Shown: piece by piece, positions 12,493-45,700 of the stretch
How the letters are laid out: each line of letters starts with the position of its first letter
How positions within the stretch are numbered: the first letter of the stretch is position 1
NCBI RefSeq assembly: GCF_016432865.1
Contig: NC_067403.1
Coordinates: forward strand, 258,044,001 to 258,090,231
Source of the DNA: Antechinus flavipes
Taxonomy: Eukaryota
Direction of reading: 5' to 3'
Length of the DNA stretch: 46,231 nucleotides
Notes under the pieces: model-generated
The model's database searches: none
The model's input: only the letters and a program-made list of their open reading frames with translations
What the model was told of the DNA's origin: nothing
Position numbers and translations under genes: made by a program

Positions 12493-13557
<1,065 letters not shown>

Positions 13558-42074: not shown

Positions 42075-42649
42075 GTGATTAAGCTCCTACTATGCGTCAG
42101 GCTTTGTGCTAAGTTCTAGGGAGGCAAAGAAAGTCTTTGTTCTCGTGGTATAATGAGGAGAGGACATTCCAACAAGGATGTTCAGATAAGCTCCATACAC
42201 AACTGTGAAAAACACAGGGAAAGGGCGGATATTAAGGAGACCTCTGGCAGATCTGAAGTGTCTTGAAGGAAGCCTGGAGATGGGACAGTGTTCCAGGCCC
42301 CGGGAGAGCCAGTGAAAATGCCTGGAATCTGGTCCGGGAGCCCCAGGGAGGAAGAGGGTGTGCCGGGAAGTACCTGGGGGAGGGGGAGGCTAGCAGGGGC
42401 TTTGCCTGCCAGAGGACTGGCTACTGGAGTTTGGAGCCATGAGGTGTGGGAATGAGGGTGATGAGGGGAGCTGATTGGGGCTGAGCTTGAGGAGGATCAC
42501 CCTGGCAGCCCAGTGCAGGATGGGTTGCATTTGGAGGCAGGCAGGTCCGGAGGCCAAAGGAACATAGAAGAGACTGCACCCCGGGGATGGCCCAGTCAGA
42601 GGAGAGAGGGAGGGGTGGACAGACACAGGAGACATTGGCAAAAGATTGG

Positions 42650-42724
<75 letters not shown>

Positions 42725-42915
42725 AAAGAACAGAGGGGGAGAGAGAGACAGAGGGAGAAAGAGACAGAGGGAGAGAGAGATAGAGACAGAGGGAGAGACA
42801 GACAGAGACAGAGGAGTTCAAGGTGATCTCTGAGTTTGGAGCCAGAGGGACAGAGATGGGCGGCGCCCTTGTCAGTAACTGGGAAGTCAAGAAGAAGGCC
42901 GGATTTGGGAGGAAG
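42075..42915 (-). mobile_element. Fragmented L2 immediately upstream of the LRP5 promoter
   Basis: Tail ttaagctcctactatgcgtcaggc, plus aggaggatcaccctggcagc and gagttcaaggtgatctctgagtttggagcc. Confidence 0.7.
42651..42720. repeat. Compound microsatellite (TG)21(AG)14
   Basis: Direct count. Confidence 0.98.
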
Positions 42916-43117
42916 TTCGGGGCAAGTTGGGCGTAAGCGGAGAGCAACAGGCGGGCAGCAGGGGAGCCCACCGGGGCCGCGGCCGGACGCGGGGTGACGG
43001 GCCCGGCAGGTGGCAGCTGGCGGGCGCGAGAGAGCACGCCGTATGGGGGTTGGCAGGCACGGAGGCGGGGCCGGCGCGGCAGCTGGGGGCGGGGAGCCGC
43101 CGGGGCTCCCGCCCCTC

Positions 43118-43171
43118 TCCTCCTCCTCCTCCTCCTCCTCCTCCTCCTCCTCCTCCTCCTCCTCCTCCTCC
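43118..43171. repeat. (TCC)18 trinucleotide repeat in the LRP5 promoter region
   Basis: Direct count, uninterrupted. Confidence 0.97.
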
Positions 43172-43439
43172 AGCTTCTCGGGAACGTCCTCCCACTGGGT
43201 TGGCGGAGGATCGGGGGAGGCCCGCCGGGAGGGGGCGAGGGGAGCTAGCAGGGGGAGCTAGCAGGGGGCGCGGGCCGCCAGGAGCGCACGCTGGGGGAGC
43301 CGAGCTGCGCTGGGGCTCGGGCAGCTGGGCGCACTGGTCGGAGCCGGAGCGAGCACCGGAGCGGGAGCGGGCGCCCGAGCAGGAGCCGGCCGGCCCGCCC
43401 GGGGGACGCGCGGACACCGGGGCCCCCGCGGCCCGCGCC

Positions 43440-43454
43440 ATGGAGCCCGAGTGA
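43440..43454 (+). promoter_or_regulatory. Upstream ORF ATG GAG CCC GAG TGA (MEPE*) in the LRP5 5' UTR
   Basis: gccATGG Kozak context; the stop lies 34 nt before the main ATG. Confidence 0.8.
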
Positions 43455-43488
43455 GGCGGCCGGGCCGGGCCGGGGCCGGGGCCGGACC

Positions 43489-43543
43489 ATGGAGGCTGTG
43501 CTGGCGCTGCTGGCCCTCTGCAGCCACTTGGCTCCAGCGAGAG
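43489..43543 (+). CDS. LRP5: LRP5 exon 1 coding part, signal peptide MEAVLALLALCSHLAPAR(G/A)
   Basis: accATGG start, hydrophobic core and phase-1 donor AG AG|gtgagt. Divergent from C11orf24 as in human. The 5' UTR matches the human LRP5 leader as I recall it. Later exons are outside the window. Confidence 0.9.
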
Positions 43544-45342
43544 GTGAGTGGGGCCCCGACGCTTTGTCTCCCGGGGGCCAACTTGGCCGGGCCTGGGCCG
43601 CCGGGACCGAGCGCAGGGCATCGCGATCGCCCGGGACCGGCGGCGAGCGGGGCGCGCAGCCCGGGCTGGGGGCGGCGGCGGCGGGCGCTGCGCCCCCCGG
43701 ACCCCCCCCAGAGGCTCACGTTAACTTTGGGGGGGGGGGGCTGCCGGCGCTGAGACAATAGAACTTTGCCGGGACCCGCTCGGGCCGGACTGCCGGCCTG
43801 CTGGCTGCCTGGCCGCCGGGAGAGGGAGCCGCTGCGGCTGGCAGCGCCGGGAGCCAATTTTGGGGCAGGAGCCGGGCCGAGCTCGAGCCCAGAAGTTGGC
43901 TCGTGGGCCTGGGACGCCCCGCGCCGCGGCCCGGAGCCCCGGGGGAGGGGCGGGGGAGGGAGATCCGAGGGAGGCGGCCGCGGGTGGCCCCCTCACGCAC
44001 CCTTGGCGCCGACCCCCGTCCCCAGCTTCCCCGCGCCTCCGCGGGTGCCCAAGTGGGGCTTTCCGGGCCCTTTGTCTGGAGGTCCCAGCCTCCTCCCACC
44101 CCGGCCCGGGGAGGCCGCCACGGGACCCTCTCCCTGCCTGCGGCCGGGCCGGAGGGAAGCGGGGCCCCCGGCGCGCGCGCGCGCCGTGCTCTCCTCTTGC
44201 TCGGGGAACTGCTCCGCCGGGGGAGGGAGGAGGCCCGGGTGCCGCGGGGTGTGGCCCAGGTGCTCGCCCTGCCTGGCGTAGGGAGGGGACGATAAAGCGG
44301 CAGGGAGGCCGGTCGGGCCGCCAGGTGCCCCTGGCCACCTGTGGAGGGCCGCCAGGTGCCCGGCCGCTGCCCCCCGCCTCGGCGCTCCCCTTTTCGGCCG
44401 GGGAGGGAGTGATCCGCAGGTGGAGGGAGCCCCACGCTGGCGCCCGGCCCAGCTCCGGCCTCCTGCTTTTCCTCGTGGCCCCGGGCTGCGGGGGGTGGGG
44501 GGGCGCCGGGCCCCCTCCTAAGCCTTCCCTCCCAAGCCTTCCCTCCCAGGCGCCGCCCCCCCTCCCCCAGGCATGGGGAGCCCGACTTGCACTGGAAGCT
44601 CTCGCCGGCCCCGCGGTGTAGACGCAGCCTTGGTGGGGGTGGGGGAGGGCAGTGCCGAAACGCTGCTCACCTGGCGGCCCGGGTTGGAGGCTGCCCCAAG
44701 AGAGGCCGGGTCTACACGTGCAGAGCGAGCTAGTGTGGCCCCGGAGGCCCGGGAAGTGGGGCCCCTAAGGTCCCGATAACTCCCCCATAACCGCCTCCAA
44801 TTATTCTTTGTTTACTGGCATAGACCTGGCTTCGGGGAAGTGTCCGGTGCGGGCTGGAGAAACAACTGGGCCCCTTGGCCTTGGCCGCAAACTTTGGGCC
44901 CTGCCCCCGGAGGGCTCAGGCCGAGCAAGGGGAGGCCTGGAGCCAGGTAGCGCTGGCTCCTGCTTCCGGGCGCCCCCTCTCTCCTTGGGCCCAGTGACCT
45001 TGGGCTGGGCACAAATCTGAGAGCTGCTGTGGCCCTGCCCTGGGACGGCCTCGAGCTGGGGGGGAGGGGGACCTTGGGAAGGGGGCTTTCGGACCCATTC
45101 TGAGTCTGCACTTAGTGTGGCGCTCTCTCCTGGCTGAGGCTCCGGGCCCTGGTCCCAAGAAGCGGGGCAACTCCTGAGATCAGGCTGCCCGGCCTCCCCC
45201 GGCTGATTCTCAGTGTAAGAGAGGAGGCTGCCGAGAGTGCCCCCCTTTCATCCTCCCCCCAGTCTTGCCCCTGTGCACACAGATTGGGTTTTAAAATTTT
45301 AACCTTATTTTTTGCCATGTTGACTTGATGCCAATTTACTCC

Positions 45343-45666
45343 TGCCAGTCATTCAGGAAGGGTTTGCTAAGCACCTACTGTGTGTCAGTCATTCAGGAAG
45401 GGTTTGCTAAGCACTTACTGTGTGCCAGGCATTCAGGAAGCGTTTACCAAGCACCTACTGGGTGCCAGGCATTCAGGAAGCATTTGCCAAGCACCTACTG
45501 TGTGCCAGTCATTCAGGAAGGGTTTGCTAAGCACCTACTGTGTGCCAGTCATTCAGGAAGGGTTTGCCAAGCACCTACTGGGTGCCAGGCATTCAGGAAG
45601 CGTTTGCCAAGCACCTACTGGGTGCCAGGCATTCAGGAAGCGTTTGCCAAGCACCTACTGTGTACC
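45343..45666. repeat. 40-bp minisatellite, 8 copies, derived from the antisense L2 3' tail
   Basis: Unit (t/g)cattcaggaag(g/c)gtttgc(t/c)aagcacctactg(t/g)gtgccag. Confidence 0.97.
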
Positions 45667-45700
45667 ATCTAGCAGGGATAACCTCTGTCACACATGTTGT

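What the first reader, a model, noticed from the sequence alone, without database searches (positions are those of the whole stretch)
43440..43491. LRP5 translational gate: strong-Kozak micro-uORF plus an RNA G-quadruplex motif
gccATGGAGCCCGAGTGA (MEPE*) is in optimal context and stops 34 nt before the main accATGG. As I recall, the human LRP5 mRNA leader contains the same ATGGAGCCCGAGTGA about 33 nt before its ATG, which would mean conservation across the marsupial-eutherian split. The spacer here is GGG-cc-GGG-cc-GGGG-cc-GGGG (43462-43481), a canonical short-loop G4 motif made of GGGGCC-like units ending 7 nt before the ATG. I do not recall this G4 in human. Ribosomes would have to reinitiate over a short, structured spacer, making this a plausible tunable control on LRP5/Wnt dosage. 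uORF-loss variants would be predicted to raise LRP5 levels.
Basis: partly seen in the sequence, partly recalled or inferred. Interest (0 to 1): 0.75.

Follow-up and report, generated by a model that had tools for sequence, protein, structure and literature searches.

The report
Tiny uORF before marsupial LRP5 start
The lead-in of the LRP5 (Wnt co-receptor) gene of an antechinus carries a real four-codon mini reading frame with a strong start signal just before the true start, an ordinary kind of translational brake; the neighbouring "G-quadruplex" motif is what such GC-rich DNA gives by chance.

Summary
The uATG is at 43440, the frame reads MEPE-stop, a 34-nt spacer follows, four G-runs lie at 43462-43481, and the main accATGG is at 43489.

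The locus is the CpG-island promoter and first exon of LRP5 in Antechinus flavipes or a very close relative. A C11orf24 homologue 99% identical to the A. flavipes protein lies about 30 kb upstream on the other strand. Exon 1 encodes a signal-peptide-like 18 residues and ends in AG|GTGAGT at 43543/43544.

The best reading is an ordinary short, strong-Kozak uORF that dampens LRP5 translation through incomplete reinitiation.

In a relative about 7% diverged, 43420-43543 shows 1 listed change, against 23 events in the 329 flanking bases. Part of that block was masked by the tool, so up to 2 changes may be hidden there.

The G4 motif is not enriched over shuffles. In leader context folding predicts it loses to G:C pairing, and the leader is no more structured than its composition predicts.

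Not shown here: the transcription start, translation of the uORF, and conservation in eutherians. The human comparison rests on memory only; no tool reached other vertebrates' LRP5 leaders.

No paper on this uORF was found. The scan's earlier notes do not mention LRP5.

The parts
43001..44700 (.). CpG island covering the promoter, exon 1 and the start of intron 1 of LRP5
   Evidence: GC 0.69-0.79 and CpG o/e 0.5-0.8 in 500-nt windows, against 0.2-0.5 outside
43086..43094 (+). GC box (GGGGCGGGG), a candidate Sp1/KLF site; a second one (GGGGCGAGG) lies at 43232-43240
   Evidence: Pattern scan. The human LRP5 core promoter is TATA-less and driven by Sp1/KLF15 sites at -72/-53 (PMC2831824). Function here is inferred.
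43117..43171 (+). (CTC)18 microsatellite just upstream of the likely start region
   Evidence: Tandem Repeats Finder, 100% matches. GC skew turns from -0.63 to +0.44 right after it.
43420..43543 (+). Conserved block: proximal leader, uORF, spacer and exon-1 coding part
   Evidence: The contig of organism B (X17) shows 1 listed change in these 124 nt, against 17 events in the 248 nt upstream and 6 in the 81 nt of intron. Fisher p is 0.008, or 0.07 if the 2 unlisted substitutions lie in the masked 43450-43493.
43420..43439 (+). C-rich segment predicted to pair with the G-runs of the spacer
   Evidence: MFE structures of the 101-, 180- and 255-nt contexts and of 244 nt
43440..43454 (+). uORF ATG GAG CCC GAG TGA (MEPE-stop), with G at -3 and G at +4
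   Evidence: Direct reading. It is the only ATG between 43043 and the main start. Positions 43440-43449 are unchanged in organisms B and F.
43455..43488 (+). 34-nt spacer between the uORF stop and the main ATG
   Evidence: Direct reading. There is no indel here in organism B, because all 20 gap letters of that piece are accounted for elsewhere.
43462..43481 (+). G4 sequence motif G3-CC-G3-CC-G4-CC-G4
   Evidence: Regex scan. The motif is real, but its density equals the shuffle expectation. It is favoured only when folded in isolation.
43489..43543 (+). LRP5 start codon and exon-1 coding part: 18 codons plus 1 nt, signal-peptide-like MEAVLALLALCSHLAPAR
   Evidence: Direct reading. ME-A and the preceding CGGAC match the human primer printed in PMC2831824. 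There is one change (43497) in organism B.
43544..43549 (+). Splice donor GTGAGT (phase 1)
   Evidence: Direct reading. No exon 2 lies within the window.
12493..13545 (-). Last coding exon of the C11orf24 homologue, used as the synteny anchor
   Evidence: Pfam DUF5585, E 1e-27. It is 99% identical to the NCBI 'C11orf24 homolog [Antechinus flavipes]'.

Best explanation
This is the 5' leader and first exon of the LRP5 orthologue of an antechinus, a dasyurid marsupial. The leader carries one AUG-initiated uORF of four codons in strong Kozak context. It is out of frame with LRP5 and ends 34 nt before the LRP5 start.

Proposed mechanism:
- On transcripts that start upstream of 43440, most scanning 43S complexes initiate at the uAUG, make MEPE and terminate.
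- Because the uORF is so short, part of the 40S subunits stay on the mRNA and resume scanning.
- With only 34 GC-rich nucleotides in which to regain ternary complex, only a fraction reinitiate at the LRP5 AUG.

The uORF is therefore a constitutive dampener of LRP5 synthesis. Its strength should depend on reinitiation capacity (eIF2 ternary complex, DENR-MCTS1/eIF2D-type recycling factors) and on how many transcripts start upstream of it. The peptide itself is probably irrelevant. The G-run motif is a by-product of GC-rich composition and adds only generic structure.

Shown here: the sequence anatomy, the gene identity, and local conservation in one relative. Inferred: transcription through the uORF, its translation, and its effect.
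For: Anatomy:
- The features were read directly. Both ATGs have a purine at -3 and G at +4.
- The uATG is the only ATG in the 445 nt before the main start.

Gene and species:
- C11orf24 homologue, 99% identical to A. flavipes.
- C11orf24 and LRP5 lie in one 399-kb human interval.
- Similarity of the start region to the human LRP5 primer.

Constraint:
- In organism B, 43420-43543 has 1 listed change in 124 nt, against a rate of about 0.07 per nt on both sides. The spacer has no indel.

Transcription, indirect only:
- The human LRP5 TSS lies 114 nt before the ATG and the RefSeq cDNA end 74 nt before it (PMC2831824). By analogy these map to 43375 and 43415 here, both upstream of 43440.
- The GC boxes at 43086 and 43232, and the switch to positive GC skew near 43200, lie upstream.
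- Fifteen runs of organism A from 5 studies, four of them on record as RNA-Seq, hold 26-29% of the sampled words of 43172-43560. That share fits exon-only coverage reaching about 43420 +/- 24.

Translational control of Lrp5 exists in mouse: its translation efficiency rises in a phospho-eIF4E-dependent way (PMC10214474).

The mechanism follows established rules, cited from my own knowledge: Kozak 1987 on intercistronic length, and Schleich et al. 2014 and Bohlen et al. 2020 on short strong-Kozak uORFs.
Against: - No read-level RNA evidence. The contigs of organism A that read laying showed were only spurious 18-36 nt GC-rich matches, so the word-share argument is an inference.
- CpG-island promoters start over broad zones, and some transcripts may begin in 43441-43488 and skip the uORF.
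- Conservation is shown only against close kin. In addition, 43450-43493 was masked as a repeat, and 2 of the 23 substitutions of that contig piece are unlisted and could lie there.
- Part of the conserved block is coding. For the 69-nt leader part alone, P(2 or fewer changes) is about 0.13.
- A strong-context closed uORF can arise by chance in a few percent of such leaders.
- No ribosome profiling, no reporter data, and no paper on this uORF.
Confidence: 0.5

Rival explanations
1. An RNA G-quadruplex at 43462-43481 forms in the spacer and, with the uORF, makes a tunable gate. Ribosomes resuming scanning must unwind the G4, so helicases, K+ or ligands would set LRP5 output.
For: - The motif is canonical: four G-runs of at least 3 with 2-nt loops.
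- Short-loop motifs arise in only 3.9% of leader shuffles.
- Folded alone, as 34 or 61 nt, the G4 is the minimum-energy state.
- No indel, and at most 2 hidden substitutions, in organism B.
- 5'UTR rG4s are known repressors, as listed in Table 1 of PMC8191793.
- GGGGCC repeats do form RNA G4s (my knowledge).
Against: - G4 motif density in the island equals the shuffle expectation, and P(any G4 in the leader) is 0.34.
- With 101-255 nt of context the G-runs pair with the C-rich 43420-43439; the MFE has no G4 and the ensemble G4 fraction is 0.002.
- The leader is no more stable than shuffles.
- The loops and flanks are all C, which favours duplex over G4.
- The only published LRP5 rG4 is in the 3'UTR.
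Confidence: 0.1
2. Incidental uATG. The ATG-stop pair is a neutral feature of a GC-rich promoter. Either it lies upstream of most start sites, or it has no measurable effect. The local conservation reflects promoter or exon constraint rather than the uORF.
For: - The TSS was not determined and no RNA contig was seen over the uORF.
- The conserved block starts only about 20 nt before the uATG and includes core-promoter-sized DNA and the coding exon.
- Chance occurrence is a few percent, and uORFs are common genome-wide.
- No literature on it.
Against: - The human TSS and cDNA end lie 114 and 74 nt before the ATG, which by analogy puts the uATG inside the leader.
- ATGs are otherwise absent from 394 nt upstream, while this one has optimal context.
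- The word share in organism A runs, four of them recorded RNA-Seq, fits a 5' end near 43420.
- A strong-context AUG in a leader is, by established scanning rules, used by most ribosomes.
Confidence: 0.25
3. Start-site switch. The broad CpG-island promoter makes two leader classes, one starting upstream of 43440 (uORF included, low output) and one starting within 43441-43488 (uORF skipped, high output). LRP5 dosage would then be set by start-site choice rather than by reinitiation.
For: - TATA-less GC-box promoter, as in human.
- The inferred 5' end of the RNA contigs (about 43420 +/- 24) and the conservation boundary (43420) both lie close to the uATG.
Against: - There are no start-site data at all.
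- A leader under 48 nt made of the G/C-rich spacer would itself be a poor substrate.
- The human TSS by primer extension is a single site at -114.
Confidence: 0.15

Closest known systems
Short strong-Kozak uORFs (stuORFs) whose downstream reinitiation needs DENR-MCTS1 (Schleich et al. 2014, 2017; Bohlen et al. 2020; from my knowledge)
   Same: A very short uORF (4 codons), optimal initiation context, and a main ORF reached by reinitiation over a short spacer.
   Different: DENR dependence was not tested. LRP5 was not found as a DENR target in the paper library. The strongest DENR dependence is reported for 1-2 codon uORFs and for particular last codons.
Kozak's intercistronic-length rule and delayed reinitiation as in GCN4/ATF4 (my knowledge)
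   Same: After a short uORF, the chance of reinitiation rises with the distance to the next AUG. At 34 nt only partial recovery is predicted, and less when eIF2 ternary complex is low.
   Different: There is a single uORF and no second inhibitory uORF. Stress would therefore lower the main ORF rather than induce it. Nothing was measured here.
Conserved dosage-setting uORFs such as PPARGC1A (Dumesic et al., abstract in PMC7288267)
   Same: A uORF in the leader of a dosage-sensitive regulator. Its loss is predicted to raise the protein.
   Different: For PPARGC1A, both conservation from fly to human and a mouse knock-in were shown. For LRP5, conservation beyond close kin and any effect remain untested.
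5'UTR RNA G-quadruplex repressors (NRAS, Zic-1, BCL-2 and others; Table 1 of PMC8191793)
   Same: The motif lies in a leader close to the start codon, with short loops.
   Different: Here the motif is embedded in C-rich sequence that is predicted to out-compete it. It is not enriched over chance. There are no structure-probing data.
The published LRP5 rG4 (Beaudoin & Perreault 2013, as cited in PMC8191793 and PMC13001201)
   Same: Same gene, and a G4 motif in an untranslated region.
   Different: The published one is in the 3'UTR of human LRP5 and acts on polyadenylation-site choice. It has no bearing on the 5' leader.

Membership tests
LRP5 orthologue, exon 1 | Conserved gene neighbourhood (C11orf24 next to LRP5) | tested here: met
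   A C11orf24 homologue lies at 12493-13545 on the minus strand. Human C11ORF24 and LRP5 lie within one 399-kb deletion interval. Their head-to-head order in human is from my memory.
LRP5 orthologue, exon 1 | Start region and signal peptide like LRP5; exon spliced to the first YWTD-propeller exon | tested here: inconclusive
   M-E-A and the preceding CGGAC match the human primer. The hydrophobic 18-residue exon ends in a phase-1 GTGAGT donor. Exon 2 is outside the window and no spliced contig was shown.
uORF (upstream ORF of an mRNA leader) | AUG upstream of the main AUG with an in-frame stop | tested here: met
   43440-43454, ending 34 nt before the ATG at 43489
uORF (upstream ORF of an mRNA leader) | Lies inside the transcribed leader (TSS upstream of it) | tested here: inconclusive
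   Indirect evidence only: the human TSS at -114, the word share of organism A runs, four of them recorded RNA-Seq, and the positions of the GC boxes and the GC-skew switch. Read laying showed no RNA contig over it.
uORF (upstream ORF of an mRNA leader) | Occupied by initiating ribosomes | not testable with these tools
   No ribosome-profiling data could be reached.
Conserved regulatory uORF | Start, stop and spacing kept across distant lineages | tested here: inconclusive
   Kept in organisms B (about 7% diverged) and F: the uATG is unchanged, the spacer has no indel, and at most 2 substitutions may be hidden in the masked part. The eutherian comparison could not be run. The metagenome scan gave only a bacterial chance hit.
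stuORF / DENR-MCTS1 target | Very short uORF with a strong Kozak context | tested here: met
   4 codons, G at -3 and G at +4
stuORF / DENR-MCTS1 target | Main-ORF translation falls on DENR loss | not testable with these tools
   No paper links DENR and LRP5 translation.
RNA G-quadruplex element | Sequence motif G>=3 N1-7, four runs | tested here: met
   43462-43481
RNA G-quadruplex element | More frequent than composition predicts, and favoured over competing duplex in native context | tested here: not met
   3 motifs against 2.84 +/- 1.36 in shuffles, and P of 0.34 in the leader. There is no G4 in the MFE of 101-255 nt contexts, and the ensemble fraction is 0.002. This is an in-silico result from an approximate energy model.
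RNA G-quadruplex element | K+-dependent folding, RT stop, or ligand response | not testable with these tools
   Requires a bench experiment.

The most novel reading that the evidence does not exclude
The MEPE uORF is an ancient element, older than the marsupial-eutherian split, kept letter for letter and at fixed spacing (33-34 nt) before the LRP5 start. Wnt co-receptor dosage would then depend on reinitiation capacity (eIF2 availability, DENR-MCTS1) and on start-site choice. In dasyurids a lineage-specific GGGGCC-like spacer would tighten the gate further. uATG or stop variants would then be an unrecognised class of LRP5 gain- or loss-of-dosage alleles, and the uORF a target for oligonucleotides that raise LRP5.
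Probability: 0.2. Interest if true: 0.55.

Novelty: new member of a known kind. Interest (0 to 1): 0.3.

Why it matters
LRP5 dosage sets bone mass and retinal vascular development. Loss causes osteoporosis-pseudoglioma and FEVR, and gain causes high bone mass.

If the uORF is transcribed and conserved into eutherians, three things would follow:
- It would give a simple way to read 5'UTR variants of LRP5 that current pipelines ignore. Most uORF catalogues exclude four-codon frames.
- It would offer a route to raising LRP5 protein by blocking the uORF.
- It would help explain why mouse Lrp5 behaves as a translationally regulated mRNA (PMC10214474).

As it stands it is an ordinary, plausible uORF candidate with modest support. 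The G4 part adds little.

Tried and rejected
1. RNA evidence. The look-up of sequencing runs offered only Logan contigs. For the organism A runs, read laying showed only spurious 18-36 nt pieces. No start site, strand or splice could be read.

2. Cross-species leaders.
- A metagenome pattern scan for uORF + gap + ATGGAG gave one hit, the end of a gene in a 69%-GC bacterial contig. It is a chance match.
- Fetching C11orf24 loci with 10-kb flanks did not reach LRP5. For Parus (L002) no CpG island or pattern was found in the flank; for Sarcophilus (L003) the pattern was absent. One isoform was not on record.
- Exact look-ups of two window ORFs over the region found nothing.
- A word search with the main-frame ORF, restricted to the leader and signal peptide, found no fragment of 94-297 aa.
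- Exon 1 encodes only 18 residues, so LRP5 proteins could not be reached by homology.

3. The human LRP5 leader. I did not type it into any tool, so the human comparison is left out and named here.

4. Literature. I searched LRP5 with uORF, with upstream open reading, with Kozak/UTR and with DENR, and the 15-mer itself. Nothing was found on an LRP5 uORF or a 5'UTR G4.

5. Rfam on 42500-44500 gave nothing meaningful.

6. Pfam on 20 long ORFs gave only the C11orf24 exon (DUF5585). Among the ORFs tested between it and LRP5, none matched a family.

7. I rejected a specially stable leader structure, because the z-scores are +1.07 and +0.59.

8. The chance of reaching LRP5 mRNA fragments was low.

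Full report
**Observation.**
- The uORF ATG GAG CCC GAG TGA occupies 43440-43454, in the context gcgccATGg.
- The spacer 43455-43488 is 34 nt.
- The G-runs GGGccGGGccGGGGccGGGG occupy 43462-43481 and end 7 nt before the main ATG.
- The main ATG is at 43489, in the context ggaccATGg. The two ATGs are 49 nt apart, so they are in different frames.
- One refinement: the main ORF encodes MEAVLALLALCSHLAPAR plus one base and ends at 43543, followed by GTGAGT at 43544. This is a short, phase-1, signal-peptide exon. Exon 2 is not in the window.

**What the locus is.**
- The region 43001-44700 is a CpG island, with GC about 0.78 and CpG o/e 0.7-0.8.
- A 350-residue ORF at 12493-13545 on the minus strand hits Pfam DUF5585.
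- That ORF is 99% identical to NCBI's 'C11orf24 homolog [Antechinus flavipes]'. Sarcophilus follows at 84% and Sminthopsis at 78%.
- Human C11ORF24 and LRP5 lie in one 399-kb interval with only three other named genes (PMC9778424). I recall them as head-to-head neighbours.
- The primer printed in PMC2831824 gives the human LRP5 start region as CGGACAACATGGAGGC.... The window reads CGGACCATGGAGGC.
- Taken together, calling this LRP5 exon 1 is well supported, though no spliced transcript was seen.

**Is it more than chance?**
- ATG is rare on this strand: four in 1.7 kb, and none between 43043 and 43440.
- A strong-context uATG closed by a stop inside the leader appears in 0.5-8% of dinucleotide shuffles, depending on leader length. 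This null is weak for such AT-poor sequence.
- uORFs are common in mammalian mRNAs (general knowledge). The uORF is a fair candidate, not a statistical outlier.
- The G4 motif is ordinary: 3 motifs on the + strand of the island against 2.84 +/- 1.36 in shuffles, and a 34% chance of at least one in the leader. Only the short-loop form is somewhat unusual (3.9%), and that criterion was chosen after seeing the motif.

**Structure.**
- ViennaRNA with G-quadruplex energies favours the G4 only when the spacer is folded alone, as 34 or 61 nt.
- With 101, 180 or 255 nt of context, the G-runs pair with the C-rich 43420-43439. The minimum-energy fold then has no G4, and the G4 share of the ensemble is 0.002.
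- The leader's folding energy is ordinary for its composition, with z of +1.07 for 144 nt and +0.59 for 244 nt.
- 'Structured spacer' is true of any 80-85% GC leader. A distinct G4 gate is not supported in silico. The energy model is approximate, so only probing can settle this.

**Conservation.** The only relatives' DNA I could see came through read laying.
- A 2404-nt unspliced contig of coded organism B (X17) covers 43172-43624 in one piece, with 23 substitutions and 20 gap letters.
- The listed differences are 15 substitutions and 2 indels in 43172-43419, none in 43420-43496, one at 43497, and then 5 substitutions and 1 indel in the first 81 intron bases.
- The rates are 0.069, 0.008 and 0.074 per nt. 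Fisher p is 0.008.
- Caveat: the tool masked 43450-43493 as a repeat, and 2 of the 23 substitutions are not listed. If both lie in the masked part, p becomes 0.07.
- All gap letters are accounted for elsewhere, so the 34-nt spacing is unchanged.
- The uATG and its first 10 bases are unmasked and identical in organisms B and F.
- This argues for constraint on the proximal leader, but part of the block is coding and the relatives are close.

**Human and eutherian comparison.**
That is memory, not a test.
- The 3' end of my recollection agrees with the printed primer.
- I could not fetch any eutherian, monotreme or sauropsid LRP5 leader. Exon 1 is too short for protein-based retrieval. C11orf24 loci with 10-kb flanks do not reach LRP5. 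The metagenome scan gave only a bacterial chance hit.

**Is the uORF transcribed?** This was not shown.
- All runs offered were contigs, and the contigs displayed for organism A were spurious GC-rich matches.
- Human TSS, indirect: it lies 114 nt before the ATG and the RefSeq cDNA end 74 nt before it, in a TATA-less Sp1/KLF15 promoter. By analogy these map to 43375 and 43415.
- Promoter features, indirect: GC boxes lie at 43086 and 43232, and GC skew turns positive near 43200.
- Word share, indirect: fifteen organism A runs from five studies, four on record as RNA-Seq, hold 0.26-0.29 of the sampled 31-mers of 43172-43560. That fits exon-only coverage starting at about 43420 +/- 24.
- My guess is that these are spliced LRP5 mRNA contigs, which the reads tool dropped as human-like because the rest of each contig is conserved coding sequence. 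This remains unverified.

**Mechanism.**
- By the scanning rules, an AUG with G at -3 and G at +4 captures most 43S complexes.
- After a four-codon uORF, some 40S subunits resume scanning. Over 34 nt only part will have regained ternary complex (Kozak 1987; my knowledge).
- The expected outcome is a several-fold constitutive reduction of LRP5 synthesis. It would be stronger when eIF2 is limiting, and it may depend on DENR-MCTS1, as described for short strong-Kozak uORFs (Schleich 2014; Bohlen 2020; my knowledge).
- Mouse Lrp5 is among mRNAs whose translation efficiency is regulated through eIF4E phosphorylation (PMC10214474). This shows that translational control of this mRNA exists, but it does not point to the uORF.

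**Literature and earlier notes.**
- No paper in the held library describes an LRP5 uORF or a 5'UTR G4.
- The published LRP5 rG4 is in the 3'UTR.
- The scan's earlier notes hold no LRP5 entry. A first-reader note on this window also names C11orf24, and one search confirms that gene identity.

**Verdict.** The gene and clade are confirmed. The uORF is a credible but ordinary translational dampener, at about 0.5 confidence. The G4 gate is not supported. The claim of deep conservation was not tested. This is a new member of a known kind, of modest interest.

Noticed in passing
window 42651-42813 and 43117-43171: A compound (TG)21-(GA)n microsatellite and a perfect (CTC)18 polypyrimidine tract sit directly upstream of the LRP5 promoter. 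GC skew swings from -0.63 to +0.44 across the CTC tract.
   Followed up: no
window 45343-45667: A 40-bp unit repeated 8.1 times (92% matches) in LRP5 intron 1.
   Followed up: no
window 43625-43745: This is an extremely GC-rich stretch of intron 1 containing C8 and G13 homopolymer runs. Organism B has 59 other letters in place of 108 here, and organism F's WGS contigs leave a gap here (43610-43727), with contig pieces ending or starting at its edges. It is a likely hypervariable or assembly-fragile spot.
   Followed up: no
window 43249-43488: The LRP5 reading frame is open for 80 codons upstream of the ATG. An in-frame CTG at 43291 has A at -3 and G at +4. A non-AUG N-terminal extension would bury the signal peptide. 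This is probably only a GC-richness effect.
   Followed up: partly
window 43172-43560 (runs X1-X15): Fifteen organism A runs from five studies, four on record as RNA-Seq, hold exactly 0.26-0.29 of the sampled words, yet no matching contig was displayed. They may be spliced LRP5 mRNA contigs hidden by the human-likeness filter.
   Followed up: partly
window 12493-13545 (-): The C11orf24 homologue's last exon is 99% identical to A. flavipes but only 84% to Sarcophilus and about 50% to diprotodonts. Only the C-terminal 75 residues hit Pfam DUF5585. The ectodomain is evolving fast.
   Followed up: partly
X17 contig over window 43172-44090: Organism B's unspliced 2.4-kb promoter contig has word depth 129 in a run with only 846 Mb of contigs. 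That would fit a chromatin-enrichment library (ChIP or ATAC) marking an active promoter. This is a guess, because the library type is not on record.
   Followed up: no
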